Below, one piece after another: positions 12,713 through 61,434 of a stretch of DNA of 64,000 nucleotides. Every line of letters begins with the position of its first letter. The first letter of the stretch is position 1. A model generated the notes under the pieces. The model was not told the origin of the DNA. It saw only the letters and a list, made by a program, of their open reading frames with translations, and made no database searches. The stretch spans positions 62,001 to 126,000 of the forward strand of contig NIVC01002525.1 of the NCBI GenBank assembly GCA_002269645.1, read 5' to 3'. The stretch comes from Macrostomum lignano (taxonomy: Eukaryota). A program made the translations under genes and the position numbers.

Positions 12713-16768
<4,056 letters not shown>

Positions 16769-22831: not shown

Positions 22832-25329
22832 ATTTGATCGTAAGAATACCGAAAAGAATGTAGCCGTGGAAGGAAAAGATTGTGATACAACGAAACTTGA
22901 AGAGTGCGATATCCGAAATGTAAACTTACGATTAAGAAAAGTCTAAAGTGACAAAATTTAACAATAGCATGTCTATCAAAATCGCTTGAATCGAATAAAT
23001 ATGCATGTACAGGTCAATTTAATATTTATTAGTTGAGTCCCTCTGAAAAGTTTTGACCATATGCCAATTATGTCAAATCGGCAAAAATATTGTCACTTTA
23101 GCAAAAGCATTAATTTGATCCAATGCTTCAATTTCAAAGTATTGAAATTCAGCAGAAGCAATTTGAACCTTCAATGAAAATTTTGACTGTTCGAAGTTGA
23201 AAAATACATGTATACCGGTGAGCGCTAATTGTGACTCCGATTTTAACATCCTTAGAATCACTAGGCTGCACGATCGCAGCAGTAGAGTGTGTTAATTACG
23301 CTTGATTGATTGTGTACATACATGTATTCTATGAAGGAGATGATGTATTTTATGAAGGAGATGAAGGAGAGGTCCATGCAAGTAGCTTAAAGTTGCGCAT
23401 TTTGAGTTTTGCAGAAAACTTGTAACTTATTTAAGTTTGTGCGTATATTAAAAGTATATAACTAGATTGTGAGTAGTGAGCTTGGGACTCTGTTATAATA
23501 ATGACTCTCGAAAGGAAGGCAAAATATGTTCACACTCCGGTGTTACGGTTTATAATCTCCGGGGCTCCGGCCATTTTAAGTCGCCGATCTGGGGACTGCA
23601 AACGGGCTGTGATCTCTGACCGGAGACCTTGAGGAGTTTAGGATCGCCTTCGGAGACTACAAACGGTTATGGGTCTCCGCGATAGGAGATTCGTAACTAT
23701 TGTGGGATCTCCGGGGCATGGTCAGGTCTCCCCATCCGGAGATCCTAAACCAGATTCTGTTGTCCCCCCCCGGAGATTCTGCATCGTTTGCCGATCTCCG
23801 ATACAAGTGAAAAAAACTAAGGTTTGGTTTAGGATCTCTGGTACAGATCTCCCCGTTTTTATTGAGTCGGAAATTTTAATCTTATTACGAGCATTGTGTA
23901 TATATAGCTGGTAACTACGTATCGTGCAGAAAGTGCTGGGTTTTTAGGCAGATTTGACGCAAAAAACGCAAATTATACTACTATCTGAAAATGAAGTAAG
24001 TAGTATACGAAAACGCTATCCTAAGCGTGATATATGGCAATATGTAGTTGTAAGAATCCATGTGCTCATATATGTACATTAATTCCATGTACATTAATCC
24101 CTATCTATCCCAAATTGTCCATGTCTATACCCAATTCTATATGTACGCAGTATGTGCATTAATCCACATGTACAGTGTCATCCCCAGACGGCCAGCGCGC
24201 GCGCACCAAAATTACAACTCGAAACCCTACTGCAGTTGTACAATCTCATCCAAATGAGTCAACTAATTGTATAGCTCACATCGTAATGTATATTTCCAAT
24301 GTACATTCTCAGAGACAGATTTGAATAATACTGGTCGGAGTCTATATGTACATCGATAGCCTCTATACTCATATCCGCTACATACCCCAAAAATTAGGTT
24401 ATGTACATTTTCACCCTCGGAGAATGTAGATTTGAATATGCTGATAATTTATTCGAAATCACTTATAAAATACACATACTTTCATATAGAGGCGGGCCTG
24501 TACAAACTCTCGCCAAGCGATGGGGTGGAGGTTGCGTCATCCAAGTCTCTCCCAAGTCTGCCCCCCAAATACAAGACTGTTGAAGCAGTGCTTTATATTT
24601 CTATTGACAGTGGGTATGATACAAGAAGCTTCGTCGCGCTTTAATTACAGTAAACCATCCCCTCGAAGCTCCTATACTGAATGTTGAATCACCCTTTAAC
24701 TCGGACCATAGTCAAATTCAACCGTGTTCGAAAACAGCCACCCCTCCGATGTTCACCAGACTCGTCTTCACAGCGCAGACCCCATAGCAAAATCGAGCTA
24801 AATTTTAACACTCGCCCCTGTTCTCTCTGTCCCCCTTCTAAATGCCAAGGAATTTCGACCCTCTCTCCATTTTCAGTGTACAGACAGATCTTTCCACAGC
24901 ACAGACCCTATATTAAACTTCATTCAGCAAAACCCCTCTCTTCTCCGATTACGTCATCCATGCCGCCCCAGATAGCAAGAAACCAACTTTTAATGCACAC
25001 ATCAACCCCACGAATCTGAGCAAATCCGAGTCCGCCAACCTCTACCTGCATTGACAAACCCCAGCTGCATTTGTAAATGTACACAGCCTATGAATCAGTG
25101 TCTCCACCGCATGCAATTCTGATTTACTTGATTCTGAAATTTGTAAATAGTATAAGTCACCCTTGCGTTTACTAGAAGTAGTGAAGTCCACAAATTTAAA
25201 TACGCGAGGCTATTCAATTCTGCCTCTCCACCTCCCCAGCCTTCTCACTTCAAGCTTTCAGACTTGGTCTTTGAGACGGTTTAATCTGTTAGAAGCAGGA
25301 ATGAATCATGCACTGACCTCTCCACACAA

Positions 25330-26330
25330 AGTAAAGTTGGAATTTCAAACAAGAAATTTGGTTATTTTGAAAGCTAAATGACTAGAAATGCACATTTTTT
25401 TCATTAAAATGCAGCTTTTCACAGTTTTTTTTACGATTTTAACCTTAAAATGCAGACTTTGTTGATCAAAATCAGTGGTTTCATCACTAGAAACCATACT
25501 TTCAACAGCTAATTTGTCCAAATGTCGCTTTCAACTTGACCTTAGACAGCTTTTAAGCAGGAATGAACCCCACACAAACATCCACAAGCCAGCCCAAAAT
25601 CATCCAAAGACATGGCTATTGAAGCCTAAATTGCTAGAAATGAGCATTTTTTCCTAAGAAATGCAAATTTTCACAGTTTTACGCATTTTTACGTTAAAAT
25701 GCAGACTTTATTGATCAAAATCAGTAGTTTCATCACTAGAAACTATACTTTCAACAACTAATTTGTCCAAATATCGCTTTCAACTTGACCTTAGACAGCG
25801 TTTAAGCAGAAATGAACCCCCCACGAACATACACAAGCTAGCCCAAAATCATCCAAAGACATGGCTATTGAAGCTTAAATTGCTAGAAATGAGCATTTTT
25901 TCCTAAGAAATGCAAATTTTCACAGTTTTTACGCATTTTTTACGTTAAAATGCAGACTTTATTGATCAAAATCAGTAGTTTCATCACTAAAAACCACAAT
26001 TTTAACACAAAATTATCACAAATGCTACTTCTGGAACTCTGAGACAGCTTTGAGCAGGAATTATAATCGCACACGGATTACCCGAGCCAGTCCAATTTCC
26101 ACTAAAGCCATAGTTTTTTAAAGCTAATTCTTAGAATTTCTCATTCTTTCGTTTAATAAAGGCCAATTTTCACAGTTTTATTATTTTCTAACGTTAAAAT
26201 GCGAAATGCGAATTGATCAAACTTAGTAGTTTCATCCCAAAAGCCATAATTTCAACCGCTAATTTGTCCAAATGCTGATTTCAGAGTTGGCAAGAGACAG
26301 CTTTCGAGCAGGAATGAGTCACACACTGAT
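25330..26330 (+). repeat. ~250-bp tandem units inside the foldback arm (fifth unit at ~28090-28300; mirrored at ~38780-40030)
   Basis: aaaatgcagac-type anchor recurs at ~25447, 25696, 25947, 26196 and 28194. Confidence 0.85.
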
Positions 26331-26350
26331 CTCCATATGCACACCCCGGC

Positions 26351-28076
26351 CAGGGAATACTCTACATATGGAAGTGACACTCCCCGATTCAGGCCTCTCA
26401 GGGCGGACCAACCCAGGCCAAGGTTTTTTTCGAACGAAAAAGCATGACTTGAAAAAAGCTTTGTTACTTCTTGCTTGGAGGGGGGTTTCAAACACTGTCC
26501 ACTCTGTCCCGACTCCCTTATTTCGAAAGGAGCAGAAGAGCAGGGGCAGAGAGGACAGTGAGAAAAAATAATGTTGGAGAGGAAAACACTGACTTAACAA
26601 AAATAAAGACACTTAATGTACATCCTGTATACAAAAGTGGGCGCTCTGGGGATGAACCATAAACGTACATCTGCCTTTTCCCTGTCCTTTCAGTTGTGAT
26701 TCTTATATAAACTCCAACAAAGTTTCGAGTAACGAAAAATCCCATTTTCCTGCTGTGTTATTGACTGCAATTCCTGGTTCCGGCTATGCGAATGCGATCC
26801 ACACCGACAGAGAAGAAAATTCGCTTTTATTCCGTTTCAAAAGGACACTTCATTGCTGCAGCGACGGCTACATGCCATTCTGAACAAAAATCTGCATCAG
26901 CATTTTGAATGTTCCAACACCTATCGCTGGTCAGCAGCTAAAAAAGCCAGAATGCCCGCCGATTACAAGAGAACTCTGGCAGCTTGAACACCTACTAGCA
27001 TTCGCCGAATTTCTACAGAACTGGCGCCAGTGGCGCGCAGCTGCAGCGGGCAAGAACTGCTTGACGAATGAAACCTTCGGTAGCTTCATTCCGACATGTT
27101 CTGCGATTCCGAAACTTTGCTCAAGACTATTTGCTACGGTGCACTTTCAGTATGCTTTGCTCGGAAAGTTTCTTTCGGAACCCATTGAGAGGCAATTCGG
27201 AAGGTATCGACAGATGTCAGGTGCTCTATACTATTGTACATCAGCTCGAAGAAGATTATTCAGTATGAAAATAAGACTAGAGTGATGTCGCTTCTATCCA
27301 TTTCTTATATCATTACCTGGCCTTGCGACGTGAGGAATCCTCAGAAAAGAAAGCCTGAATGTCATGTTTTACATCGTAGGATATCTGTCAAAGTCCATTG
27401 GTAAACGCTGTCATGGGTATCGCCAGTTTCTGGTCAGCGAGAACAACTTTCCAGCACTGGAAATCCCAACTGAAAATTTAGATCAGAGGCCGGCAAACTC
27501 CGTCCACTTTATCCTCTCTATCAATGGCAATTGATGGCAATGGCAAACTTCAATGGCAATTCGGCTCGGCCCGCACAAAGTTGCTGTCCCTTCTAAGTTC
27601 TCTCCTCTCCTCTCTCCTCTCCTCACCTTTCTTATCACCTCTATTCTTTCATCTCCTCACTTTTCTTATCTTCTGTCTTCTCTCCTTTCTTTTCTCCTCT
27701 CATCGATCTTCTCTCTTTTCTCTTTTATTTCTCTCCTTTCTTTTCTCCTTTCATCGATCTTCTCTCTTTTCTCTTTTATTTCTCTCCTTTCTTTTCTCCT
27801 TTCATCGATCTTCTCTCTTTTCTCTTTTATTTCTCTCCTTTCTTTTCTCTTTTATTTCTCTCCTTTCTTTTCTCCTTTCATCGATCTTCTCTTCTGTTTC
27901 TCTCATTTCTCTCCTTTTTTTCTCCTCTCATCGATGTCTCATCTCCTCTTTATTCTTCTCTCTCCCCCCATTCCCTCACCTTTCCACTCTCATCTGGGTG
28001 GGTTTTGGGGACGAGTTGGCCCGGGTTGGTCCGCCCCCATTGGGGAGTGTCACTTCCATATGTAGAGTATTCCCTG
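26351..28076 (+). mobile_element. P-superfamily DNA transposon, internally deleted, non-autonomous
   Basis: Perfect 35-bp TIRs cagggaatactctacatatggaagtgacactcccc; 7-bp TSD ccccggc. Decayed THAP start (PFSCCVIDCNS..GY..SLLFRF.KD...QHFE, ~26740-26910) fused to a transposase C-terminus (LTNETF...YALLGKFLSEPIERQFGRYRQMSG; FYIVGYLSKSI). Confidence 0.92.
27595..27990. repeat. CT-rich low-complexity repeat inside the P element
   Basis: tttctctcctttcttttctc...atcgatcttctctc units; the ORFs 27524-28189 and 27553-28065 are artefacts of it. Confidence 0.9.
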
Positions 28077-28384
28077 CCCCGGCCCAAGTTGGAATTCCAC
28101 CCAAGACATTTTCATTGAAAGCTAAATTACTAGAAATTGCACATTTTCGTTTTAAAAAGGTCAATTTTCACAGTTTTTACTCTTTTTAACGTTAAAATGC
28201 TGACTTTATTGAACAAAATTAATCACTTCATCAGCAGAAACCATAATTTTTACAACTTAATCGTCAAAAATGCTGTTTCATCATTCAAATGTATGTATTT
28301 GGTACGTGGAATACCCCTCAAGAAGTCAGGGAAGGGATTATTCTTGAATATTGGGTTAAAACGTACAGTTTGCTATAAACCTAG

Positions 28385-28806
28385 TGTAACGGTTTGGAAA
28401 TTCTGTAATTCAAATCTTAGTTTATTTACATGGTGTATTTAACTTTATTCAAATCCTTAGCTGTTTAGATTACGTGCGTAATTTATTCTAGGGTTTTAAT
28501 ATTACGTATTTTGTTAATTTGGTTTCCGTTTCCAAGAAATGCGACTCATAATTTTAACATGTAAGTTCTAGTCTTTTTGTCTGTAAGCGTGTGGCAGCCT
28601 GGGACGTAGATCAACCTAGCATGTACGTGAGATACAATAATTATAATCAGAGCCGATCACCAGTGTACGCATTCATACTAAGACAGTAAGATTTCTTATG
28701 CTCCGAGTATAGTAAATCGTCCAGGACTGACAGACGTATCTGCTGAACCATATACGTTGCTAACACTCTCTTCGCTAGTAATATTAAATATACCGGACTC
28801 GTTACA
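28385..28806 (+). repeat. 5' LTR (422 bp)
   Basis: tgtaac...gttaca; one difference from the 3' LTR seen by eye (ctagg vs ctatg). Confidence 0.97.
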
Positions 28807-28812
28807 TCAATT

Positions 28813-28825
28813 TGGAGGTCCCACC
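28813..28825 (+). promoter_or_regulatory. Primer-binding site complementary to the tRNA-Gln 3' end
   Basis: tggaggtcccacc is the reverse complement of GGTGGGACCTCCA, the eukaryotic tRNA-Gln 3' end as I recall it; starts 6 nt after the LTR. Confidence 0.8.
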
Positions 28826-29437
28826 ACCGAACTCTTCATATCAGTCATCATCATCAGGCGTCCGTCAGCATTCAGGCTCCCATCCTCATCAGGCACTGCG
28901 ACACGAGAATTTTGGCCGGGTACACAATAGCCATCTGCAACCGCAACCAGGTCCTACACTACAGTATTGCGGCGAGGCTCAGGCAGCACAATTTCGTTTC
29001 AACTTGTCTAAAACCGCGTGAGTCAGCTCTACATCTAGACCCAAGGCCAAGCGAAAACAGTCAATACGCTCGTAGCTACGGCGCGTCAAAACCCCAGCCG
29101 GTCAACTCAGCGTAAACAACACTCAACTGTTCTGAGGTCCGTCTAAGCTGCCGACTGAACCGCGAGACCACCACCCCAGCGGCAGCCACCCCTAAAGGCC
29201 ACAGCCAATCCGGTCCAAGCGGCAGTACGGCAGGACGGCAGTCTGTACATTGTACTCCACGGCCAATAACCTCCAAGAGTTTCATCACAGTTGTGAGTGT
29301 GGTTGCTTCTTTTTGGGCTGTTTAGCTGAGCTTACCTGGCTGTTCAAAGGTGTGTACGCGTGTAGGTTTTTTTCTTCCTTTCCTCTCTGTAATCTTAGTC
29401 TTCACTTTGCACTGGCACACCTCTTTTTTCTCTCAAT

Positions 29438-32400
29438 ATGTCTGTAGAGCAATCAGCCATTGGAACTCAAGGCGCACCTCTGTTGGGTGAACCCATTAAG
29501 CTGCCTGAGACTGAGAAGGCTCAAAACGAAGCCGAGTTAAACCAAATTGCTACTGAGAGTAGCGTGGGTGCTATTTTAGGAAGTCTTGACAGAACGCTGG
29601 GCAACTTGGATGCTAAGCTTGACTATGCGAGAGTGCCTGAGGCAAAGCTGAAAGCCCCACCTTGCTACCACCCTAAAATCAGATTTGAGCTCTGGGAGAC
29701 ACAACTCCGGGCCTATTTAAGCGTTAACAGAGTTCAGCGGGAGCACTGTGGCGGTGTTCTTTTCTCTCTACTATCGCCAGAAGTCCAAGAGTTTTACTAC
29801 AATAGCAAACTACAGGATCTAGCGTTTCCAGCAGCATTAGAAGCTCTCCGCGAGCGGTACACGGACTCTAGCAGTGCCGATAAATTTTACATTGAGCTGA
29901 CAGTTGCCCACCAAGCTGATGGCGAAGGAATTCAAGAATTCTGTGACCGTCTTGTAGCCCTAGCCACCGCAGCTAAAATTTCTGCTCCACACAGCGATCC
30001 ATTGGTTCGGTCACGTTTTTGTTATGGAGTTCTAGACAAAAATCTAGCTGAGAAACTAATTACAATGACCCAGGAGTCACCCAAAGCAACCCTTCAAGAC
30101 CTCCTGAAGAAAGCCAAAAGGTTTCTAGACATTCAGAAGCTGCTGAAACCGACTGAGACAAGCAAGATCCGGCAGTTAGAAGTAGACGAGATAAGCCGAC
30201 TCAAAAACAGGATCCAAGAACTTGAGACAGAAGTCAAGCAGAGGGGCAAGTTCGAACACGAATTTAATAGCCAGCCTACTGGGGGATTTAGACCACAGGC
30301 TTTGCACACTGCCACTGATAAACCACCGAGGTACAATGCGCCTATCACGGACAGGCACGCAGGCAAGCGGCACTGCTTCAGGTGCGGTTCAGCTGATCAC
30401 CTGGTAGCAGAGTGCCCTGGCTCAGGTGCACCTGAAAACGGTAAATTTTCATGGCGCCACCCGAGGCAGCCCACACAGAAAGGCTCAGCTAAAGTGGAAA
30501 AAGAGCTGGGTAGAATTTCCTACTGGTCAAATGCCTACGGATTCATCCAGTCTCTGCCTCTGGGAGATTCTGTTTTCGTACACTTCTCGCAGCTCAGCAG
30601 CGAGTTAAAGGATCTTGTCCCCGCCCATCAGATTGTCGGAGCGCCCGTAGAGTTTATCCGGCTAGCCGACAAGGGCAAGAAAAACGACCGTGCTGTTGAT
30701 GTTGTGAGTAGTAACCAGGATGTCCGGTGCAGCCAAACCGTGTCTAGGGCAGAATCCTCCAGCTCCGGGTACTACCTGCAGGCCACTGTGGGAGACATTA
30801 AGCTGATTGGGTGTCTAGATAGTGGTTCAAATGCGTCCATCATCAGCCCAGAAATTCGGGACAAACTGTTAGCAGCCGATCCTATCAATAATCGCTTCAC
30901 GGCCGCAACTACAGTGCAGTCAGCTTCGGGATTCAATAGTGCCTCCAGCCGAATCCTTGGCAAGTTAGTTTGCGAGGTTCAAGTAGCGAATGAGACAAAG
31001 CCGCACGTTTTCCTAGTCATAGAACACTCGATCTCCGACACTCTCTTTGGGATCGACTTCATGCGGAATTTCCGGATTAATTTATTGGTGGCAGAGGGTC
31101 GAGCGACGGCTGGAGGTGAGCTTATTCCTGTCATCGAAGGGGACAGTAGCATCTTCCAAGTCAAGAGAGTGCTGGCGGCTTGCAATGTCGAACTGCCGCC
31201 CAGGTCGGAGACTCTAATCCCTGGGAGGGTGATAGACAGTCAGCCTAACACCTGCGGCTCCGTGGGTGGCAAGATTTTTGCGAACGACTCGAGCCTCTTA
31301 ATAGCACACTCGGTAGACCAAGTAAACAGTTCCAATCATATCTTGCTGCGGGTCTTAAACACCAGTGAAGAACCAGTATCACTCAGAAGAGAAGATGAAA
31401 TGGGATCCTTCCAGCAGTTGGGGCCAAACGAGACAATCAGTAAAACTTCAATTTCTGAAAAAGACTTTAAAATCGAAAACACTGATCAGCTCCTTAGAAA
31501 ACTCAATCAGCTGCCTAGTCCAGATGAAGGTACAGCGAAGTGGCTATCAAACCAGTTTCGCCTAACGGAGTCCAAACTCAGCGAGGAACAGTTGGGAACT
31601 ACACTGAAAATGCTTAACTATTTCTTAAGTCAAATCTCTCGTAGTGAGCACGATATCTCGAGAACCCAATTGCATGAACTAGCTATCGAACTGAAAGACC
31701 CTAGCTGTAGGCCGATCACGCAGCCATCACGCCGCACCACCCCGGCTCAAAAAGATTTCCTTGACAAATATATAGAACAGCTAGTGGAGCAGGGCATAGT
31801 AGAAGAGTGTGATTCCGAGTGGGCCTCACCAATTGTCTTAGTCAAAAAGAAGGACCAGTCTTACAGAATGTGTGTTGACTACAGAGCGGTCAACAAGCTA
31901 ATAAAGCCGTGTAGCTTTCCGCTCCCATTAATGGATGAAACGTTTGATAGCCTTGCCGACTCTACCATCTTTTCAACACTAGATTTAACAAGTGCATACT
32001 GGCAGGTAGGAATTAGAGAGCAAGACCGAGACATTACGGCTTTTTCTTGCCCCCAGGGCACATTCCGTTGGCGAGTTGTGCCATACGGTATCAAAACGGC
32101 ACCATCTAACTTTGCTAAGCTGATGCACCGTGTGCTCAAACCCTTGCTGATGAGAGTTAGCCTCGTCTATCTTGACGACGTCATTATCAAAGCTCGAACT
32201 AGTAGCGAAATGATAACAAACCTAGCGCTGGTGTTTTGGCAACTACAAAAGGCAAACCTAAAAATTAAGCCAGCTAAATGCGAGCTTTTCAGGGAAAAAC
32301 TAAAGTTTTTAGGATTTGTAGTATCGGCGGATGGAATCGAGACGGACCCCAGCAAAACAGAGGCCGTCCAGAGTTGGTGTAGGCCAAAGACAGGGAAACA

Positions 32401-35400
32401 ACTCTTGTCATTCTTAAATTTTGCCAACTATTACCGTAAATTTGTGCCAAAATTCTCGATCATAGCAGCTCCACTGTACGCTATCGCTAACTCCGATAGG
32501 TTTCACTGGGAAGAAAAGCACGAAGAAGCTTTCAAACAGTTAAAGGACAGTCTCTGCAATCCTCCAACTCTGGCGTACCCGGATATGCGTCCAGAAGCCG
32601 GCCCCTTCGTGCTAGACTGTGACAGCTCTGGCCTGGGGGTGGGAGGAGTCCTGTCCCAGGTTGGCAAAGCTGGTAAAGAGCATGTGATAGCATTCGCTTC
32701 GAAGAAGTTCAACAATGCACAAAGAAATTATTGTGCAACAATGCGCGAGCTGCTCGGTTTGATTATCATGCTAGAGCAGTTCCGCACTTACCTCTTAGAC
32801 AGGCCTTTCGTCGTCCGAACTGACGCCGTGGCGCTTAAATGGCTTCATTCCAAAAAACACGCTACGGGAATGCTAGCCCAGTGGCTTGTGATCCTAGAGC
32901 CTTACAACTTTAGCGTTGAGCAGACGCCGCTGGAACGCTTGGCAGACTTTGACTTCTCCGTGGAACATAGGCCTGGGGAGAGCCACATTAATGCCGACAT
33001 TCTCAGTCGCAATCCCAAATTCCGTCCGGACCATTTCGACTGCCCATCTTGCTCTCGTATTCCAGAGTTTCAGGCCAGGTTCGGATGCCAAAGTAGCGCC
33101 GTTAGAGCCGTTAAAATAGGCTGTGCTAAATTAGAAAAGCACGAGGCTTCGACTCAAACCGAAGGTACACACTTTTTAGATCAACCAACCATGTGTGAAC
33201 CCACTAGGAATGATGACCACGGCAATGAGAGCCGGCTTGATAGTTGTCACTCAGTTAGCCAAGCGATCCAGACTGATCCATCAGGCACAAACCAGAAAGA
33301 AACCTCTGAAGATAGCCAAATTCAAGTGACAAAACCTAAGGTTCAGGTGGCTAAAATTGCAACTAATTCTAACAATGACCAAAGTGCGAAGAGTGACAGA
33401 ACGAGCGGTAGTCATTCCTTCCACATTGGAACCAGCCTAGCGAATCAAGCCGCTGATGATGCAAGCGAATTAAGCCTACCACAGAGTGAGGCTGATGAGA
33501 GAGTAGATGTGGATTGGGTGACGCTGGCACAAGAGTCAAACGTAGATCTGCTGAGAATCAAGCAATCCGTAGCTGGCTCCGAACCGAAACTTAGCAAACA
33601 GGATATTCAAGATTGCAGTCGAGAAATTAAAACTCTCTGGGCTCTGTATAACGAACTGTCAGTTGAAAATGGCTTGCTCTACCGCACAAAGCCAGCGAGG
33701 AAGGGCAAACCGAGTGTTAAGCAGTTGATAATTCCCTCGTCTGCAAATTTAGATGAACTAGTAATCAAGTACCATAGAGCGTGCAACCATTCAGGAGCCA
33801 ATAAAACCACGGCGGCATTGAAGGCACGTTTCTTGATCTTTGATCTGGAAACTTACGTAAGAGTATCGTTGCCGAATGCGAAACTTGCGCCAGAGTTAAG
33901 AAAGGTACAAAGAAGATTAGAGCCCCCCTGCAGCCTACCTTGGCAGGGTATCCCAATCAGGTGGTACACGTTGACCATTGTGGACCTTTTCCTGAATCTA
34001 ATGGTATGCGGTATCTTCTGGTGCTGATTGATCGTTTCACCAGCTTCGTCGAGATTGTCCCGGTGCCTGATGTCTCAGCAGGAACTACGGCGCTAGCCAT
34101 CCTCACTGAATGGGTGGTAAGGTATGGGACGATGGAACAGATTGTCTCAGATAACGGCACTGCATTCATTAACGCTACGGTTGCCGAGTTGACTCGAATA
34201 CTCGAAATCGACATGGTTAGAATCGCAGCGAGAAGACCACAGGCCAATGGCAAGGCCGAACGAGCTATCCAAACGATCAAAACCAAAGTTCGGGCAGTGT
34301 GTGCTGATCGTAGAATAGGGTGGCCTTTGGCTGCTAAGCTTGTGGGGTTGTCGATCCGGACGACCGAATCCGAGTCTACCGGCTTCACGCCAGCCAAGTT
34401 GTTCTTCGGGAGAGAACTCGACATCCCCTTGGACCTCCAGTACAACCCACCACCAAGAGAATACTATGATCCGGAATCTTACGCACACACCCTGCACAAA
34501 GCCCTGGTCGAAACATCGGCTACGGCTCGCGCTTTGCGGGGAAAGGCCCAGAGAAGACAAAAGCGCTACTATGACAGAGCCGTTTTTAAACCTAACTTTG
34601 AAGTAGGTGAGCTGGTCTGGGTTCGAAACCCGGATCACAGAGGCCTTGACCCAGCAGTTTGGTTGGGACCATACCGCGTAGTTCAGCAAATATCCGAGCG
34701 CAACTATCGGCTCCTGCCCGAATTTATTAAAGAAAATCCATTCATTCGAACTCCTAACCCGAGCCACAATATTTATAATGTAGACAGAATCAAAAAATGC
34801 ATACGCAAGCCGAACTATCAAGACACCATTGACCGTTTCGGTCTAAAAATAACTGCACGGTTGCCGGAATCTCGTGTGGGAAATTGTGACGAGGACTCGC
34901 CAGCCTCGGATTCCAGCTCGGACTCCGACATGGAAGAGCGTGGATTACCTTACTTCCCAGTTGCAGGGCTGGGATCGAACCAGGTGCAGTCCAGTGAGAA
35001 CCAGGTGCAGTCCAGTGAGAACCAGGTGCAGTCCAGTGAGAACCAGGTGCAGTCCAGTGAGAACCAGGTGCAGTCCAGTGAGAACCAGGTGCAGTCCAGT
35101 GAGAACCGGTGCAGTCCAGTGAGAACCAGGTGCAGTCCAGTGAGAACCAGGTGCAGTCCAGTAAGAACCTGGTGCAGCCTGGTGAGAACCAGGTGCAGTC
35201 CGGCGAGAACCAGGTGCAGTCCAGTGAGAAACGGTTGCAGCCCGGTGAGACTCCGGTGTGTACAGGTGGAACCCAAGGACAACCGGTTGAGCACCTTGGT
35301 CAGCCAGTTTTGGACCTGTTGCAACCCAGAACAGAGTCTGGAGATTTTGTGCAGGAGCCAGATTTTTTAAGTGAAAAACACACTCAACACCGTGTGCCTG

Positions 35401-35705
35401 AAGTAGGTAATAGTAGCACGAATCGACTCGAACAAGTCGAGGATGGCCAGGTTCCTTCAATCGGTGCGGAGGTAGAGATAGTGGGAGATAGAACGCGTGA
35501 GTTGCCTGGAACCGCCAGCCAAGGACAGAGGACGGAGCCAGCTGGCCAGCGTGAAACAGTGGAACCAAACCCATCGTTATCAGACAGAGTCAGTACTCGG
35601 GGTAGCATTTACACCACTCGAAGTGGCAGGGCGGTTCGGCCGCCAACCAGATTTTTGCAGGTGCTTGCCGGGTTTTGCCACCGCTCCAATTCCAACAGTC
35701 TTTGA
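29438..35705 (+). CDS. Gag-Pol polyprotein (~2089 aa if two single-base deletions are repaired): capsid, CCHC knuckle, cold-shock domain, protease, RT, RNase H, integrase, repetitive tail
   Basis: CFRCGSADHLVAEC (30374-30415); CSD-like 30503-30706; LDSGS (30818); YLDD (32168); LDCDSS/RELLG/RTD RNase H; H..H...CETC, VHVD, SDNG and GKAER integrase motifs. Frame changes near 33860 and 35107 are each explained by one missing A. Confidence 0.93.
34978..35240 (+). repeat. 21-bp coding minisatellite in the integrase tail, (NQVQSSE) x ~12
   Basis: Unit aaccaggtgcagtccagtgag. Confidence 0.95.
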
Positions 35706-36270
35706 TTTCCTTCTCTTTCCCTCCATTCGTTGTGTTGTCTCGCTTTGTTCTCTTCTTCCTTTTCTGTTCTTTGTTTTCCGTGCCAGTGCCAAGTTAGCCC
35801 TGAGTCTGCCGGTTGCGTTGCCGCCGGTGGGTTGTGTGTGTGTGGGGCGGCGTCCCGTCCGTGTGTTGGCTGGGTGAGCTCTGCTGCGCAGTTCGAATTG
35901 AAGTTCGTGCATTCCGATCCGTGGTGACGTTATTTTCGGTTCTGTGATTTTCTTTTGTCACTTAGCTCTCGGTTTCAGTTGTAATTATTAATTGTTATTT
36001 TACGTCCTTGCTTATAAAAGTTTCAGTGATGCAATATTTTAATCCGTGCTAGTTACAGAATGTTACTTAAGGTCTTTTAAATCCCATGCAATATGCTCAA
36101 TAACTTCTCAACATTCGTATACTTTCGGTGACGTCTACTTTGAATATTTCGTTCACTCCGTTCGTGTTCCCATTCTTGTGTCATTCAATTTCTGTTCGAT
36201 GTGTTCGGTTAATAACGCTAATCATGTTAATAATGTTTCATGGAGTTTACTGCCAATAGGCTCGTTATGG

Positions 36271-36282
36271 AAGGGAGGCGAG
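36271..36282 (+). promoter_or_regulatory. Polypurine tract
   Basis: aagggaggcgag directly before the 3' LTR. Confidence 0.85.
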
Positions 36283-36704
36283 TGTAACGGTTTGGAAATT
36301 CTGTAATTCAAATCTTAGTTTATTTACATGGTGTATTTAACTTTATTCAAATCCTTAGCTGTTTAGATTACGTGCGTAATTTATTCTATGGTTTTAATAT
36401 TACGTATTTTGTTAATTTGGTTTCCGTTTCCAAGAAATGCGACTCATAATTTTAACATGTAAGTTCTAGTCTTTTTGTCTGTAAGCGTGTGGCAGCCTGG
36501 GACGTAGATCAACCTAGCATGTACGTGAGATACAATAATTATAATCAGAGCCGATCACCAGTGTACGCATTCATACTAAGACAGTAAGATTTCTTATGCT
36601 CCGAGTATAGTAAATCGTCCAGGACTGACAGACGTATCTGCTGAACCATATACGTTGCTAACACTCTCTTCGCTAGTAATATTAAATATACCGGACTCGT
36701 TACA
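36283..36704 (+). repeat. 3' LTR (422 bp)
   Basis: Direct repeat of 28385-28806. Confidence 0.97.
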
Positions 36705-38589
36705 CTAGCTATAATAATTTTAACATATACAGTCGGCGAAGCGGCCCGTTGATTTCGATTGACATTTAAACTGTCCCTCCCAGACCTCTCTCTCTCTCCT
36801 TCTGCACCCACCGAGAAAAGTGACTCATGCGGCAATCAGCTGGACAGGTTTTATTACTGAATTGGCAAAACAGCCAACACCCAATGGTCATATTAGACTC
36901 GTCTTCACAGCACAGACCCATGTAGAACAGAACCACTCGTCCCTGTCTCTCTGACCTTACCATTTCTAACTGTCAAGGAATTCCGACCCTCCCTCTCCAA
37001 TTTCAGTGTACAAACGAAGAGCCCAGAGGCTCGAAACCGGTAGCCCATATTAAATTAATTAAGTCTTTTGATTTTTTTAAACACGCCGTGACCTCTCTTC
37101 TCTCTCTCTCTACCTCTCCAATTTCAGTGTACAAACAGATATTTTCACAGCACAGACTCATATATTGAGCCTCCTCCAACCAAAACCCTATCTTGATTAC
37201 GTCATCCACCTCCCCATAGGAGCAGTTAGCAAGAAACAAAATTTTTCGATGCACATATGAACACTGTGAACCATGCAAAATCGCACATCTACGGGTCGAT
37301 TTTGATTGACAATTTAATACCTTTTGTTGATGCTGCTGTGTACAGTAGTCTTATTTCCGAAGCTCCTAGCAGTCATCTTTTAGATGTGGTGAATCAGTGT
37401 TGTTTTTGCCAACTTTACATCTTAATTGATTCATCCTCCAAATTCTTCAACTCTGACCATATTCAATAATTTAACCCATGCAAGTAGATTTGCCAATTCG
37501 CCAAATTAGCCAATACGAATGGGGCCAGAGGACCCACCCAAATCGAGCCCTTGTCTCTCTCAGGCCTCTCTCTCCTACACATACCCCAGAAAAGTGACTC
37601 ATGAGGCAATCAGTTTAACAGGTTCAGTATACTGAATTGGCAAAACAGCAAACACCCAATGGGCAATGGACTCGTCTTCGCAGCACAGACCATTTTGAAT
37701 AAAGCCAAAACACACATACACCCCTATTCTCTGACCAAACCTTTCCATTTCTAGTTGTCAACGAAATTCGACCGGCCTCTCTCTCAATCCCAATGTACAT
37801 TTTGACGAAGCAAGCAGATCTTTTCACAGCACGGACCCAGCCTCCCCCAACCAAAGCCCTATCTCTGATTACGTCATCTATACATCCCCATAGAAGCAGT
37901 TAGCAAGAAAAAAATTTCGATGCACATATATGAACAATGCGAACCAAGCAAATCCGCGCGTCTACCAAAGCCAACCCTACCCTGCGTGCTGTAATTGCAT
38001 TTGTCAATGTACACACCCTATGAATCAGTGTCTCCTTCTTTGGAACACACGAAGGCATTAGTCAGAAAGTTTGGATGCAATTAAAAACTCTCTCGATGCT
38101 TTGCGTATAAACGAGTAATCGATTGAATCAATTGTACACTTGACACATTTAATTACGTGCTGCCATGCAACGGAAAGACAGGATAATGGGGTGGGTGGTC
38201 ACGCAGCCTCATTCTCTCTTTCCTACTGATTTTTCATTATCTATCAATCTCAGCTCTTTCCGGGGCAACTCGCGCATGTGTGCATAGTTCCTCATCAGAT
38301 TTACCACATGTTCATTTACATGTGATGTACATATGCAAGCGGCAGCCGATTTAAACCTGAGAAATGGTTGAAGCACTCCCCCGACTATGACTAAATGCAC
38401 GTACGTTCAGTCAAATACAGGAAAATTTGACACCCGTAGTATGAAGATGTAATCTTCACGAAAGCTTCACATGTTTATCTTTCTCTGGGGAAATGACGAT
38501 AGTTTCTCAATAAAACTCTGTCATAGGCCCAATATAGCAGTTTAAATATTTTCACGAAAATGTCGCATTATTCAAAGAACTGATTGAAC

Positions 38590-41448
38590 TGAGTCACTTT
38601 TCTCGGTGGGTGCAGAAGGAGAGAGAGAGGTCTGGGAGGGACAGTTTAAATGTCAATCGAAATCAACGGGCCGCTTCGCCGACTGTATATGTTAAAATTA
38701 TTATAGCTAGGTTTATAGCAAACTGTACGTTTTAACCCAATATTCAAGAATAATCCCTTCCCTGACTTCTTGAGGGGTATTCCACGTACCAAATACATAC
38801 ATTTGAATGATGAAACAGCATTTTTGACGATTAAGTTGTAAAAATTATGGTTTCTGCTGATGAAGTGATTAATTTTGTTCAATAAAGTCAGCATTTTAAC
38901 GTTAAAAAGAGTAAAAACTGTGAAAATTGACCTTTTTAAAACGAAAATGTGCAATTTCTAGTAATTTAGCTTTCAATGAAAATGTCTTGGGTGGAATTCC
39001 AACTTGGGCCGGGGTGTGCATATGGAGATCAGTGTGTGACTCATTCCTGCTCGAAAGCTGTCTCTTGCCAACTTTGAAATCAGCATTTGGACAAATTAGC
39101 GGTTGAAATTATGGCTTTTGGGATGAAACTACTAAGTTTGATCAATTCGCATTTCGCATTTTAACGTTAGAAAATAATAAAACTGTGAAATTTGGCCTTT
39201 ATTAAACGAAAGAATGAGAAATTCTAAGAATTAGCTTTAAAAAACTATGGCTTTAGTGGAAATTGGACTGGCTCGGGTAATCCGTGTGCGATTATAATTC
39301 CTGCTCAAAGCTGTCTCAGAGTTCCAGAAGTAGCATTTGTGATAATTTTGTGTTAAAATTGTGGTTTTTAGTGATGAAACTACTGATTTTGATCAATAAA
39401 GTCTGCATTTTAACGTAAAAAATGCGTAAAAACTGTGAAAATTTGCATTTCTTAGGAAAAAATGCTCATTTCTAGCAATTTAAGCTTCAATAGCCATGTC
39501 TTTGGATGATTTTGGGCTAGCTTGTGTATGTTCGTGGGGGGTTCATTTCTGCTTAAACGCTGTCTAAGGTCAAGTTGAAAGCGATATTTGGACAAATTAG
39601 TTGTTGAAAGTATAGTTTCTAGTGATGAAACTACTGATTTTGATCAATAAAGTCTGCATTTTAACGTAAAAAATGCATAAAAACTGTGAAAATTTTTATT
39701 TTCTTATGAAAAAACTGCGCATTTCTAGCAATTTAGGCTTCAATAGCCATGTCTTTGGCTGATTTTGGGCTGGCTTGTGGATGTTTGTGTGGGGTTCATT
39801 CCTGCTTAAAAGCTGTCTAAGGTCAAGTTGAAAGCGACATTTGGACAAATTAGCTGTTGAAAGTATGGTTTCTAGTGATGAAACCACTGATTTTGATCAA
39901 CAAAGTCTGCATTTTAAGGTTAAAATCGTAAAAAAAACTGTGAAAAGCTGCATTTTAATGAAAAAAATGTGCATTTCTAGTCATTTAGCTTTCAAAATAA
40001 CCAAATTTCTTGTTTGAAATTCCAACTTTACTTTGTGTGGAGAGGTCAGTGCATGATTCATTCCTGCTTCTAACAGATTAAACCGTCTCAAAGACCAAGT
40101 CTGAAAGCTTGAAGTGAGAAGGCTGGGGAGGTGGAGAGGCAGAATTGAATAGCCTCACGTATTTAAATTTGTGGACTTCACTACTTCTAGTAAACGCAAG
40201 GGTGACTTATACTATTTACAAATTTCAGAATCAAGTAAATCAGAATTGCATGCGGTGGAGACACTGATTCATAGGCTGTGTACATTTACAAATGCAGCTG
40301 GGGTTTGTCAATGCAGGTAGAGGTTGGCGGACTCGGATTTGCTCAGATTCGTGGGGTTGATGTGTGCATTAAAAGTTGGTTTCTTGCTATCTGGGGCGGC
40401 ATGGATGACGTAATCGGAGAAGAGAGGGGTTTTGCTGAATGAAGTTTAATATAGGGTCTGTGCTGTGGAAAGATCTGTCTGTACACTGAAAATGGAGAGA
40501 GGGTCGAAATTCCTTGGCATTTAGAAGGGGGACAGAGAGAACAGGGGCGAGTGTTAAAATTTAGCTCGATTTTGCTATGGGGTCTGCGCTGTGAAGACGA
40601 GTCTGGTGAACATCGGAGGGGTGGCTGTTTTCGAACACGGTTGAATTTGACTATGGTCCGAGTTAAAGGGTGATTCAACATTCAGTATAGGAGCTTCGAG
40701 GGGATGGTTTACTGTAATTAAAGCGCGACGAAGCTTCTTGTATCATACCCACTGTCAATAGAAATATAAAGCACTGCTTCAACAGTCTTGTATTTGGGGG
40801 GCAGACTTGGGAGAGACTTGGATGACGCAACCTCCACCCCATCGCTTGGCGAGAGTTTGTACAGGCCCGCCTCTATATGAAAGTATGTGTATTTTATAAG
40901 TGATTTCGAATAAATTATCAGCATATTCAAATCTACATTCTCCGAGGGTGAAAATGTACATAACCTAATTTTTGGGGTATGTAGCGGATATGAGTATAGA
41001 GGCTATCGATGTACATATAGACTCCGACCAGTATTATTCAAATCTGTCTCTGAGAATGTACATTGGAAATATACATTACGATGTGAGCTATACAATTAGT
41101 TGACTCATTTGGATGAGATTGTACAACTGCAGTAGGGTTTCGAGTTGTAATTTTGGTGCGCGCGCGCTGGCCGTCTGGGGATGACACTGTACATGTGGAT
41201 TAATGCACATACTGCGTACATATAGAATTGGGTATAGACATGGACAATTTGGGATAGATAGGGATTAATGTACATGGAATTAATGTACATATATGAGCAC
41301 ATGGATTCTTACAACTACATATTGCCATATATCACGCTTAGGATAGCGTTTTCGTATACTACTTACTTCATTTTCAGATAGTAGTATAATTTGCGTTTTT
41401 TGCGTCAAATCTGCCTAAAAACCCAGCACTTTCTGCACGATACGTAGT
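38590..41448 (-). repeat. Uninterrupted right TIR of the foldback element
   Basis: Reverse complement of 23914-26350 + 28084-28384 + 36709-36827; carries single (empty) ccccggc and ctag sites. Confidence 0.93.
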
Positions 41449-44400
41449 CTGGTACCTTCGCTACCCATTTAACATTTTTATCGAAGCATGAATGGTAAAT
41501 GGTAGTAAAAATCTACTTGTAGAAAGCATTTCTTGAGATGTTTGCTGTTGACACGGAGTCCTGCTAATCGATATGGCAACTCAGCTACCCACGCTCAGCC
41601 CGCGCCTTGCACGTGGGAGATCAGACTCCGCTTGGGCCAGGCGCGCCCACTCTGACTGACACTTTTCTCATCACTGACTTGTACCCCTCAGTCTGCAGCT
41701 AGGCTGGTCTTGCAGCTGTTTTTCACCAGCGGGTGCTTCGCTGACCTCTGCGCCAGCGCGGTCTGTTTAATAATAATAATAATAAATGGGACCATTGCTT
41801 GAAACTTTGCATTTATAATTTGGGCCAAATTACGCTTATCTTATTGTTCTTAAAATCAACGGTTAAGGGCAGTCCGGGCGTATAGTTTAGTTCATTAATC
41901 TCAAACTCGTATCTTTTGCTTGTTTTTACATTGTGTACATAAAACTTAGAAATATTAATATTATGTACATAAGCTAGTGAGAGAGTAAAATGCTGTTGGT
42001 GGTCTGTAAGGAAGTTATTTTGAGGTATGAAATCATACATGCAATAATCATCGGACACAATCGTCTTTATATATTTTTCTAACAGCGTCTAATGTGTCTT
42101 TGCTTACATGGTTTTGTTTTGATGAGTAAGTTTCAGAACCGTATTTAAATGGTTTCTTGGAAAATTTACCCAAAATGCACCCGACTATGAGGCTCTTCAC
42201 GGCAATCGATTCCAGAACCAGAATCGGTTCGGATTTCCAAGAAAAAAAGCAGTATAACTTTTAAACTTTGTTGAATGTTTGACTGCCTTAACAGCCTCAC
42301 TCTGCACAATTTTTCACTTTCTTCTTGGCTATTGCCATCCAATAATCACAATTTTAAAGCACTAATCACCGGAAAGCTAGGGGCCTAGGTATAGCCTGTT
42401 GAGTGTTGGCAATATTACAAAATACTAAAATAGGCCTACTATTTTTTAATTAGGACTTATTAATATTTGCTTTCAAAGCATTTTTCTAAATTCTAGTAAA
42501 TTGATTTTCAATTTTTATCATAACAATTGTTAATTATAGGCCTAGCTTTGGTTAGGCAGCTAGGTCTAGGCCTAGCTTGGGGCATAGGCCTAGGCCTAGG
42601 CCACCTAGCTTGGGGCTCAGGCTTACTATTTTTTATTAATTTCTGTTGGTGCAAAGCATTGGCCATTCCATTGTCCTAATCCTAACCTAAATATTAATAA
42701 TTTATAGTATTGAGTCACTTATCTATGAAAGATGTTTCATTTAAAACAAAATTTTTTGCATAAATAGGAAAAGAAAGAGAGTGAGACTTGAATAATTGTG
42801 TGCTAGGGTATTGTATATTTATATTTATGTTAAGCCTAATAGAACATTCCAGAATCCAGAAAGATTGAAAAGTTTATTTTCAAGTATTATAGTTTTTAAG
42901 CTTGTAGGCCTAATAAAGCATTTACACAAATGTTTAGGCTTAAGCATATTGATTTTCTGCAATAAATATTATAAGCAAGAAAGATAAATAATAAACCAAA
43001 TTGTCTACTAAAATTAAAAAGGTCTTTTATGCAATTTATTGTTTATTGTTTCAATGCAAAAAAGTTCATTTATTGTTGCAATATTGGCCTAGATTTGAAA
43101 GTATAGTATTTTTTGGCATGCAATTGTAACTATTCAATTTTTGTTTTAGTATGCATTTAACAATCTAGACCATGGATATGAATATATTTGCATAGTAATA
43201 AACAAATGTTTTCATATGGTATTCTAGCTCTAAAGTTAGGACTAGGCCTATATATTAGGAACTAGCAAAAACTGTGCATGTTTTTATTTTTTGAAGTTTT
43301 ATATCTTAGCATATACTGCTTCTAAACTGACTAAACTATAGAAATTGTAGAAAATTATAGTAAATTATAAAAAAAAGAGCTATATAGTTACTATGTTTTG
43401 GGCAATGTTAGACTTGGGTATCAAAATATTTATTACTAATTTTATATTTAGGAATGTGCAAACTTTTTGTATAGTATAGCTAGGTTCAGTTTAGTCCTTG
43501 AAGTTGTTTAGATTTAGTAAATTTAGATTGTCTTTTAAGGTTTAGAATTTGGAAGTGAATAAAAGTATTTATTAACTTTACCTATATATTGCCCTCAATT
43601 CTACATTATTAAATTAAGCATATGATTAGGTAAATATAATACATAGTTACTCTTGCCTGGCACATGACCAAGATAGCCATATACCAAGATGGCCATAGAT
43701 CTAAATGTTCAAATATATAATAATAAGCCTAAGTCTATATATTTCACTCATTTCCTAGTGATAGTAATTAGGGAGATTACTATAACCTAAGGATGCTATG
43801 GATGCTATAGATGCTACTAAAGAGATGCTATAATGGAATTGTATTATATAATCATTCCCTTTGGCTTTAGCTTTTATTGTAGCCTAACCTATATATATTC
43901 ATCCACTATATAAAGCAATTAGCTAATTAGCTAATAATTAGCTAATAATAAGCTAGTATATGGTAATATAAGCTAATATAAGCTAATATTAGCTCAAATT
44001 TTATTAAGAGTGACAGCATCTTAGATCTAAAAAATTTTCTCTTTGATTTTTCTTGCAATTTAGTATAGAAAAAAGCTTTCCCTTTTTGGATTTCAAAAAA
44101 TATTTTGATTTTTGTATTTTAAATGGTAAAAGCATTTTGATAAACTGAGAATTCCATGAGTCACAGAAATTTCTTCCTAACATGTTTGCTCTATATACTG
44201 TCACTATTGTATCTTAGAGATTTAAATGTTTAAAGCCAGAAAGCATGATAAGTAATAGCAAGCTTTATAGCCTAAGATATCAGATATCTATTGTAATATC
44301 TCTCTTTGAACTTTGGCATCTCAGCAACTTATTACTTTAGTTTGCAACAATATTGGCTATATATTTTTTTATTAACAGTTTTGATGCTCTGCGAGTTTCC

Positions 44401-60643: not shown

Positions 60644-60680
<37 letters not shown>

Positions 60681-60711
60681 ATCCGTCTGTGTGTCTGTGT
60701 GTCTGTCTGTG

Positions 60712-60742
<31 letters not shown>

Positions 60743-60815
60743 CTGTCTGTCTGTGTGTCTGTCTGTCTGTCTGTGTGTCTGTCTGTCTGTCTGTCTGTCT
60801 GTGTGTCTGTCTGTG

Positions 60816-60906
<91 letters not shown>

Positions 60907-60935
60907 GTGTCTGTCTGTCTGTGTGTCTGTGTGTG

Positions 60936-60974
<39 letters not shown>

Positions 60975-61103: not shown

Positions 61104-61158
<55 letters not shown>

Positions 61159-61224: not shown

Positions 61225-61258
<34 letters not shown>

Positions 61259-61395: not shown

Positions 61396-61434
<39 letters not shown>

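What the first reader, a model, noticed from the sequence alone, without database searches (positions are those of the whole stretch)
23914..41448. Giant non-coding foldback element: 2.86-kb TIRs, 6-bp TSD, AC...GT termini
Seen: near-identical ~2.86-kb arms, a 1.76-kb spacer with no recognisable gene, termini 5'-ACTACG...CGTAGT-3', and an exact 6-bp TSD (ctggta; a chance 6-mer match is about 1 in 4096). Established: 6-bp TSDs with long TIRs are typical of Maverick/Polinton elements, but those are usually described with AG termini and shorter TIRs; Drosophila FB and Galileo foldbacks have 9- and 7-bp TSDs. Inference: a non-autonomous derivative of a Polinton-like or as-yet unclassified integrase-driven element. 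The transposase remnant inside belongs to a nested element, not to this one.
Basis: partly seen in the sequence, partly recalled or inferred. Interest (0 to 1): 0.8.

Follow-up and report, generated by a model that had tools for sequence, protein, structure and literature searches.

The report
Non-coding foldback transposon with nested inserts
This is a 7.5-kb non-coding "foldback" mobile element in an animal genome, later swollen to 17.5 kb by two other mobile elements; its 6-bp target duplication is unusual for foldbacks, but only this one copy could be examined.

Summary
Two inverted arms (2,857 and 2,859 nt, about 99.5% identical) end sharply at 5'-ACTACG...CGTAGT-3'. They are flanked by an exact CTGGTA direct repeat and separated by a 1,762-bp middle segment. 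No protein family matches the middle segment or the right arm in any of six frames.

Two nested insertions in the left arm inflate the locus to 17.5 kb. One is a 1.7-kb deleted P-superfamily element (7- or 8-bp duplication). The other is an 8.3-kb young Ty3/Gypsy retrotransposon (LTRs 421/422 identical, 4-bp duplication CTAG). The intact right arm serves as the empty site for both.

Each arm has a unique terminal domain, about 4.7 tandem 250-bp subrepeats and a short inner domain. This is the classic foldback layout seen in FB, Galileo and Tetris.

My best reading is a non-autonomous foldback-type DNA transposon of unassigned superfamily, recently inserted by an enzyme that cuts 6 bp apart.

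The AC..GT termini match neither Polinton (AG..TC) nor IS3EU/GingerRoot (TA..TA).

Copy number could not be tested, because the host genome is absent from every collection reachable here. Interest is moderate to low.

The parts
23908..23913 (.). Left copy of the 6-bp target-site duplication CTGGTA
   Evidence: Read directly; identical to 41449-41454.
23914..26350 (+). Left arm, segment 1. It holds the terminus ACTACG..., a unique terminal domain to about 25293 (with a ~375-bp module at 24731-25105 that recurs in the middle domain), then ~250-bp tandem subrepeats from about 25294.
   Evidence: Inverted-repeat pairs I1 and I2; global alignment; self-comparison; tandem repeats of period 249.
26351..28076 (+). 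Nested element 1: an internally deleted P-superfamily DNA transposon. Ends are CAGGGAATAC...GTATTCCCTG (about 34 nt perfect, 68 nt at 79%). Duplication is CCCCGGC (7 bp), or 8 bp if the element starts at 26352. It carries a CT-rich 51-bp tandem array at about 27600-27965.
   Evidence: (I15). It is absent from the right arm, whose sequence at 39007-39014 is the uninterrupted site.
26899..27492 (+). Broken P-type transposase gene of nested element 1. Only about the C-terminal quarter is kept. Breaks: one large N-terminal deletion and two in-frame stops.
   Evidence: phmmer gives 670 relatives; the best is 60% identical, E=4.5e-36. Full-length relatives carry THAP + TNP-like RNaseH_N + TNP-like GBD. 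tblastn aligns residues 606-831 of the 860-aa best hit. That hit is named as a Macrostomum lignano THAP-domain protein. Stop count.
28077..28384 (+). Left arm, segment 2: the last subrepeat and the start of the inner domain. Its first 7-8 bases are the duplicated target of nested element 1.
   Evidence: Pair I3 with 38707-39014.
28385..36704 (+). Nested element 2: a Ty3/Gypsy LTR retrotransposon of 8,320 bp. LTRs are 28385-28806 and 36283-36704 (TG...CA, 421/422 identical). The 4-bp duplication CTAG lies at 28381-28384 and 36705-36708.
   Evidence: LTR alignment. Pfam on the pol ORF: RVT_1, RT_RNaseH and RT_RNaseH_2 are above the cut-offs, while the aspartyl-protease and zf-CCHC hits are below them; rve is above its cut-off on the separate downstream ORF. 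The right arm shows the uninterrupted site ...AAACCTAGCTAT....
29438..35370 (+). gag-pol of nested element 2, given as one part. gag: no break. pol: one change of reading frame and no in-frame stop otherwise. Whether the frame change is a mutation or programmed cannot be told here.
   Evidence: ORF list; Pfam; tblastn of distant relatives falls in two frames.
36709..36827 (+). Left arm, segment 3: the inner domain, ending in a short (CT)n tract that differs by one unit between the arms.
   Evidence: Pairs I7 and I22.
36828..38589 (+). Middle (loop) domain of 1,762 bp, non-coding. It consists of two diverged direct copies (74-80%) of a ~780-bp unit plus about 550 bp of unique sequence. Each unit contains a 68-75% copy of arm module 24731-25105, in the orientation of the left arm.
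   Evidence: Self-comparison; six-frame Pfam negative; sequence.
38590..41448 (-). Right arm, uninterrupted, 2,859 nt. Inner domain 38590 to about 38810, subrepeat array about 38811-40068, terminal domain to 41448 (...CGTAGT).
41449..41454 (.). Right copy of the 6-bp target-site duplication CTGGTA

Best explanation
A non-autonomous, foldback-type class II (terminal-inverted-repeat) transposon of unassigned superfamily, 7.5 kb long, that inserted once at ...TATAG|CTGGTA|CCTTCG.... Two other mobile elements then inserted into its left arm.

Shown: two near-identical 2.86-kb arms with sharp ends; an exact 6-bp flanking duplication; arms built as terminal domain, ~250-bp tandem subrepeats and inner domain; a non-coding middle domain made of internal duplications; and two later insertions, each with its own duplication, for which the other arm supplies the empty site.

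Inferred: the element was inserted by a DDE-type transposase or integrase supplied in trans from an autonomous relative elsewhere in the genome, cutting the target with a 6-bp stagger. The terminal bases, and possibly the subrepeats, act as protein-binding sites, as proposed for Galileo and Tetris. The insertion is young, or the arms are kept alike by exchange within the element. The age argument is that arm divergence outside one small patch (3 differences in about 2.8 kb) is no greater than that of the nested retrotransposon's LTRs (1 in 422).
For: Arms, termini and duplication.

Modular foldback layout. It matches the published scheme for Tetris of final domain, 220-bp tandem repeats, inner domain and non-coding middle (PMC4079207), and Galileo arms with ~210-bp internal tandem repeats (PMC3573991).

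No coding capacity.

Nested insertions sit in one arm only, with 7/8-bp and 4-bp duplications checked against the other arm. So the locus is a real, historically layered structure and not a symmetric artefact.

The left and right flanks are unrelated, unique sequence.
Against: Only one copy is seen. No second copy of termini, arm or middle domain exists in the 64-kb window or in the viral, metagenome or prokaryote contig collections. The host genome could not be reached.

Mobility therefore rests on a single 6-bp duplication (p about 2.4e-4) plus architecture.

Another inverted duplication that is not a transposon lies at 1-2285/5527-7434 of the same window, so inverted duplications do arise here by other routes.

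No superfamily can be named. The termini AC..GT fit none of the described 6-bp families.
Confidence: 0.7

Rival explanations
1. A non-autonomous deletion derivative of a Maverick/Polinton. On this reading the long inverted ends and the 6-bp duplication come from a Polinton-type integrase, and all genes have been lost.
For: The 6-bp duplication is rare among mobile elements and is the described length for Maverick/Polinton (PMC6839031, PMC10045372). Polintons have inverted ends of hundreds of bases (my own knowledge of Kapitonov & Jurka 2006 and Pritham et al. 2007; not re-read here).
Against: The termini are AC..GT, not the described 5'-AG..TC-3' (PMC6839031). No trace of integrase, polymerase, ATPase, protease or capsid appears in six-frame Pfam. 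The arms, 2.86 kb with 250-bp tandem subrepeats, have the foldback layout. IS3EU/GingerRoot and Ginger2 share the same duplication length, so length alone does not discriminate.
Confidence: 0.1
2. A one-off inverted segmental duplication from a replication or repair error, not a mobile element. The CTGGTA repeat would then be chance or junction microhomology.
For: It is single-copy as far as can be seen. The same window holds another inverted duplication at 1-2285/5527-7434, 96-99% identical and carrying a host transporter exon.
Against: An exact 6-bp direct repeat abuts both outer ends precisely where complementarity stops, with chance about 1/4096. Repair-generated inverted duplications copy adjacent local sequence and leave no flanking direct repeat. 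The arms are non-genic and have the domain structure typical of foldback transposons. The flanks are unrelated to the arms.
Confidence: 0.13
3. An assembly or long-read 'foldback' artefact, in which a chimeric read carrying both strands was assembled as a palindrome.
For: Foldback chimeras are a documented long-read artefact (PMC12870357). The arms are almost identical.
Against: The structure is not symmetric. It has a 1.76-kb unique, direction-specific middle domain, two insertions totalling about 10 kb in one arm only, scattered arm differences, and different unique flanks on the two sides with a direct repeat. An artefact would give mirror-image flanks and no duplication.
Confidence: 0.03
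4. Whatever its origin, the locus now acts as a hairpin-RNA / small-RNA source. Read-through transcription of the arms would give a long double-stranded RNA, and it is a landing pad that has trapped two other mobile elements.
For: Inference only, from 2.86-kb near-perfect complementary arms and two recent foreign insertions within 17.5 kb.
Against: No expression or small-RNA data are available here. Nothing in the sequence marks a promoter. No Rfam family is found in the window. It is not exclusive of the transposon explanation.
Confidence: 0.04

Closest known systems
Tetris (Drosophila virilis foldback transposon; PMC4079207)
   Same: Non-autonomous. The inverted arms are made of a terminal domain, a variable array of ~220-bp tandem repeats (here ~250 bp) and an inner domain. 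The middle domain is non-coding, and only a few structurally complete copies are known.
   Different: Tetris makes 8-10-bp duplications and is assigned to Mutator on that basis; here the duplication is 6 bp. There is no sequence relationship. The arms here are longer (2.86 kb).
Galileo (P superfamily foldback-like transposon of Drosophila; PMC3573991, PMC3688188)
   Same: Very long inverted ends (up to about 1.2 kb) with ~210-bp internal tandem repeats that add transposase-binding sites. There are many two-arm non-autonomous copies.
   Different: Galileo has 7-bp duplications and a P-type transposase. The P-type remnant at this locus belongs to a separate nested element with its own ends and a 7/8-bp duplication, not to the foldback.
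FB of Drosophila / Tm1 of root-knot nematodes (Mutator-related foldbacks; PMC3169594)
   Same: Composite inverted arms built from tandem subrepeats, with many non-coding copies.
   Different: They have 9-bp (8-10) duplications and subrepeats of 13-15 bp (Tm1) rather than 250 bp.
Maverick/Polinton
   Same: 6-bp target-site duplication and long inverted ends.
   Different: The described termini are 5'-AG..TC-3' (PMC6839031), and here they are AC..GT. Polintons are defined by polymerase B, integrase and capsid genes, none of which are present. The arm layout here is foldback-like.
IS3EU / GingerRoot
   Same: 6-bp duplications; present in animals (PMC6839031, PMC10045372).
   Different: Their termini are TA..TA (occasionally TG..CA), their inverted ends are 100-150 bp, and they encode an integrase-like transposase. 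None of these features is seen here.

Membership tests
Foldback-type transposons (structural class) | Long terminal inverted repeats that make up most of the element | tested here: met
   2 x 2.86 kb of a 7.48-kb element.
Foldback-type transposons (structural class) | Arms are modular, with internal tandem subrepeats between a terminal and an inner domain | tested here: met
   About 4.7 copies of a ~250-bp unit, 72-94% alike, in each arm.
Foldback-type transposons (structural class) | Middle domain without coding capacity (non-autonomous copies) | tested here: met
   Six-frame Pfam negative at E<=0.1; no ORF hits.
Foldback-type transposons (structural class) | Flanking target-site duplication | tested here: met
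   CTGGTA on both sides. The 6-bp length differs from FB (9), Galileo (7) and Tetris (8-10).
Foldback-type transposons (structural class) | Dispersed multi-copy family in the genome | not testable with these tools
   There is no other copy in the window, and the host genome is not in any reachable collection.
Maverick/Polinton | 6-bp target-site duplication | tested here: met
   family value from PMC10045372 and PMC6839031.
Maverick/Polinton | Termini 5'-AG..TC-3' | tested here: not met
   The termini are ACTACG...CGTAGT; family value from PMC6839031.
Maverick/Polinton | Protein-primed polymerase B, retroviral-type integrase, ATPase, protease and capsid genes (or recognisable remnants) | tested here: not met
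   No family hit in six frames of the middle domain and right arm. The only integrase in the locus belongs to the nested Ty3/Gypsy element, which lies between its own LTRs.
IS3EU/GingerRoot | 6-bp duplication with TA..TA termini and 100-150-bp inverted ends | tested here: not met
   The duplication length fits. The termini (AC..GT) and the 2.86-kb arms do not (PMC6839031, PMC10045372).
P superfamily (Galileo-like foldback) | 7-8-bp duplication and P/THAP9-type transposase between the arms | tested here: not met
   The foldback has a 6-bp duplication. The P-type remnant lies inside a separate insertion in one arm only.
Mutator superfamily (FB, Tm1, Tetris) | 8-10-bp duplication | tested here: not met
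   The duplication is 6 bp, and neither 8 nor 9 bases of flank match. MuDR/IS256 as a whole is quoted with 4-10 bp (PMC10045372), so this lowers but does not exclude a distant relationship.
Dada | 6-7-bp duplication with insertion into multicopy small-RNA genes (family values recalled from Kojima & Jurka 2013, not re-read here) | tested here: not met
   The joined flanks contain no tRNA. No Rfam family is found in the window. The flanks show no small-RNA gene by eye.

The most novel reading that the evidence does not exclude
The element is the first seen member of a foldback lineage mobilised by an enzyme that makes 6-bp staggered cuts. That enzyme would be either an integrase-type transposase (Polinton, GingerRoot/IS3EU or Ginger2 relatives) or a still undescribed superfamily with AC..GT termini. 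This would show that the foldback architecture has evolved in yet another transposase lineage besides Mutator and P.
Probability: 0.15. Interest if true: 0.6.

Novelty: new variant of a known kind. Interest (0 to 1): 0.35.

Why it matters
Foldback elements are strong sources of genome instability: hairpins, inversions by ectopic recombination, and seeds of satellite DNA. So far they have been tied mainly to the Mutator and P superfamilies. A foldback with a consistent 6-bp duplication would add an independent origin of this architecture and would point to an uncharacterised autonomous partner in a poorly sampled animal lineage.

As it stands, the locus is a clean worked example of three layers of recent mobile-element activity in which one arm documents the pre-insertion state of the other. 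It does not yet show anything outside known biology.

Tried and rejected
1. Exact look-up of ten window ORFs (arm, middle domain, nested elements, host exons) in the 15-billion-protein collection found none.

2. Similarity searches with two host exons gave no hit: an MFS transporter exon (cut-off 1e-10, probably too strict) and a p190-RhoGAP-like exon.

3. The Gypsy gag-pol ORF (gag to RNase H) found only 35-37% identical relatives. The source organism and its close kin are therefore absent from the collection, and other copies of the foldback cannot be fetched by the protein route.

4. Exact scans for the terminal 23-mer in metagenome, viral and prokaryote contigs all gave zero. A scan for the Gypsy LTR start in metagenomes also gave zero.

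5. Rfam and tRNA scans of the window found nothing.

6. A tRNA scan of the joined flanks, testing a Dada-like small-RNA target, found nothing. The 102-aa open stretch across the junction does not look like an exon.

7. Pfam and PDB sequence searches run directly on the 126-aa ORF of nested element 1 were negative. Only the exhaustive representative search, followed by Pfam on its hits, identified it as P-type.

8. My own impression of a THAP-finger remnant upstream in that element was not supported by tblastn and is dropped.

9. I considered a Macrostomum host because of the best P-type hit. I rejected it as unsupported: M. lignano proteins are in the collection, yet the host exons found no match.

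10. The pentamer ACTAC (at the terminus) and its complement GTAGT occur at arm positions 1, 64, 87 and 131, and GTAGT recurs in three successive 250-bp subrepeats. This is too short to carry weight and is recorded only as a lead.
Full report
**1. What is there**

The finding's coordinates are exact. Inverted-repeat detection gives four collinear blocks: 23914-25652/39710-41448, 25686-26351/39007-39672, 28077-28384/38707-39014 and 36705-36827/38590-38710.

Two foreign inserts interrupt the left arm. Once they are removed, the left arm (2,857 nt) aligns end to end with the reverse complement of the right arm (38590-41448, 2,859 nt). The alignment has 9 mismatches and 5 small indels; an earlier blastn gave 99.3%. 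Six mismatches and four indels lie in one ~80-bp patch of the subrepeat array. Elsewhere there are 3 mismatches and one (CT)n length difference in about 2.8 kb.

The complementarity ends exactly at ACTACG.../...CGTAGT. CTGGTA abuts both ends (23908-23913 and 41449-41454). No longer or shifted duplication fits. For this one fixed position the chance of a 6/6 match is about 1 in 4,096.

The flanks on the two sides are unique and unrelated to each other.

**2. Anatomy of the element proper (7,478 bp)**

Reading each arm from the outside in, there are three parts:
- a unique terminal domain of about 1.38 kb, containing a ~375-bp module at 24731-25105;
- about 4.7 tandem copies of a ~250-bp unit, 72-94% alike;
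- an inner domain of about 230 bp.

The 1,762-bp middle domain (36828-38589) is not arbitrary sequence. It is two diverged direct copies (74-80%) of a ~780-bp unit followed by about 550 bp of unique sequence. Each unit contains a 68-75% copy of the arm module, in the orientation of the left arm.

Nothing codes for protein. ORFs of at least 50 aa have no Pfam match. A six-frame translation of 36705-41448, with stops marked X, gives no family at E<=0.1.

**3. The two nested elements**

(a) 26351-28076 has its own inverted ends, CAGGGAATAC...GTATTCCCTG. The target duplication is 7 bp (CCCCGGC), or 8 bp if the first C is counted as flank.
- Its 126-aa ORF has 670 relatives in the representative library; the best is 60% identical at E=4.5e-36.
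- Full-length relatives carry THAP, TNP-like RNaseH_N and TNP-like GTP-binding domains, which is the P-element/THAP9 transposase layout.
- The best hit is a Macrostomum lignano protein.
- Only about the C-terminal quarter of the gene survives (residues 606-831 of 860). The breaks are one large deletion and two in-frame stops.

(b) 28385-36704 is a Ty3/Gypsy LTR retrotransposon.
- The 422-bp TG...CA LTRs are 421/422 identical, and the duplication is CTAG.
- Reverse transcriptase and RNase H score above Pfam's cut-offs on the pol ORF, with sub-threshold protease and zinc-knuckle hits; the integrase core scores above its cut-off on a separate downstream ORF.
- gag is unbroken. pol has one change of reading frame.

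For both insertions the uninterrupted right arm shows the pre-insertion sequence. So both arrived after the two arms already existed as near-identical copies.

**4. What it most likely is**

The layout is the published definition of foldback elements: terminal domain, tandem subrepeats, inner domain and a non-coding middle.
- Tetris has a final domain, 220-bp tandem repeats, an inner domain and a non-coding middle (PMC4079207).
- Galileo arms carry ~210-bp internal tandem repeats that add transposase-binding sites (PMC3573991, PMC3688188).
- Tm1/FB arms are composite (PMC3169594).

Together with the exact flanking duplication, the best explanation is a non-autonomous foldback-type DNA transposon. 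It would be inserted in trans by an enzyme that cuts the target 6 bp apart (confidence 0.7).

The structure, the duplication and the order of events are shown. The enzyme, the role of the subrepeats as binding sites and the youth of the insertion are inferred.

**5. Which superfamily?**

Duplication length is the only clue. A 6-bp duplication is described as rare. It is found in Maverick/Polinton, IS3EU/GingerRoot, Ginger2 and some LTR elements (PMC6839031, PMC10045372).
- The described termini are AG..TC for Polinton, TA..TA (occasionally TG..CA) for GingerRoot/IS3EU, and TG..CA for Ginger.
- GingerRoot inverted ends are 100-150 bp.
- This element's AC..GT termini and 2.86-kb arms fit none of them.
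- There is no remnant of any Polinton gene.
- Known foldbacks have 7-bp (Galileo) or 8-10-bp (FB, Tm1, Tetris) duplications.
- The Tetris authors note that the foldback structure may arise independently in different transposon lineages (PMC4079207).
- Unclassified inverted-repeat families with 6-bp duplications have been reported before, in C. elegans (PMC2817418).

I therefore file it as a new variant of the foldback kind with the superfamily open. I give the Polinton reading about 0.1.

**6. Rivals**

*One-off inverted segmental duplication (0.13).* This is the main rival, because only one copy is visible. The same window also holds a genuine inverted duplication of host sequence at 1-2285/5527-7434. 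Against it stand the precisely placed direct repeat, the non-genic modular arms and the unrelated flanks.

*Long-read foldback artefact (0.03; PMC12870357).* This is contradicted by the asymmetry of the locus: a direction-specific middle domain, about 10 kb of insertions in one arm only, and different flanks.

*Small-RNA-producing hairpin (0.04).* This is possible but untested, and it is not exclusive of the transposon explanation.

**7. Context and limits**

The host is a metazoan.
- MFS-transporter exons lie upstream.
- A weak, sub-threshold match to the p190 RhoGAP FF domain lies downstream.
- The region is extremely rich in mini- and microsatellites.

No Rfam family or tRNA is present. The reconstructed host target holds no tRNA.

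The source organism is not represented in the protein collections or contig sets available here. It remains the key next step.

**8. Verdict**

- Novelty: a new variant of a known kind.
- Interest: 0.35. It is a tidy, recent, three-layer mobile-element nest with an unusual duplication length for a foldback, but it rests on one copy.

Noticed in passing
window 1-2285 and 5527-7434 (runs off the window start); related copy at 14108-14584: A second inverted duplication, 96-99% identical. It carries an MFS/SVOP-like transporter exon (identical 130-aa ORFs at 212-604 + and 6831-7223 -). A third, 82% paralogous exon lies at 14136-14572. This looks like an inverted segmental duplication of a host gene, not a transposon.
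   Followed up: partly
window 3722-4031 and 46785-47101: A ~310-bp dispersed repeat, 88% identical, present in opposite orientations 43 kb apart. It may be a SINE or MITE family; ends and duplications were not examined.
   Followed up: partly
window 12759-~14900; 17528-18964; 52348-~54800; 55525-56128; 56597-57874; 58129-58548; 60600-61650: An unusually dense set of long mini- and microsatellite arrays. Examples are about 235 copies of an 8-bp unit and about 104 copies of a 23-bp unit. Several create long spurious ORFs in several frames.
   Followed up: no
window 29438-35370 (gag part of the nested Ty3/Gypsy): The gag region gives a weak cold-shock-domain match (PF00313, E=3.7e-4, below the curated cut-off) next to the zinc knuckle. 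That would be an unusual gag component if real. The 3' part of the element also carries a 21-bp tandem array of 13 copies at 34977-35250.
   Followed up: no
window 27600-27965 (inside nested P-type element): A CT-rich 51-bp tandem array of about 4 copies, with shorter periodicities, fills much of the deleted P-type element.
   Followed up: no
window 54977-~63000 (+): One ORF in this stretch (56164-56574) gives a weak match to the p190 RhoGAP FF domain (PF16512, E=1.3e-3, below the cut-off), hinting at a p190 RhoGAP-like host gene interrupted by repeat arrays. It has no detectable relative in the 5.8-billion-protein collection at E<=1e-3, which suggests a poorly sampled or fast-evolving animal lineage.
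   Followed up: partly
arm positions 1, 64, 87, 131 and three successive 250-bp subrepeats (right arm 38590-41448, read outside-in): The pentamer ACTAC (at the terminus) and its complement GTAGT cluster in the first 131 bp of each arm, and GTAGT recurs in three successive subrepeats about 251 bp apart. This could be a protein-binding motif, but it is too short to be significant.
   Followed up: partly
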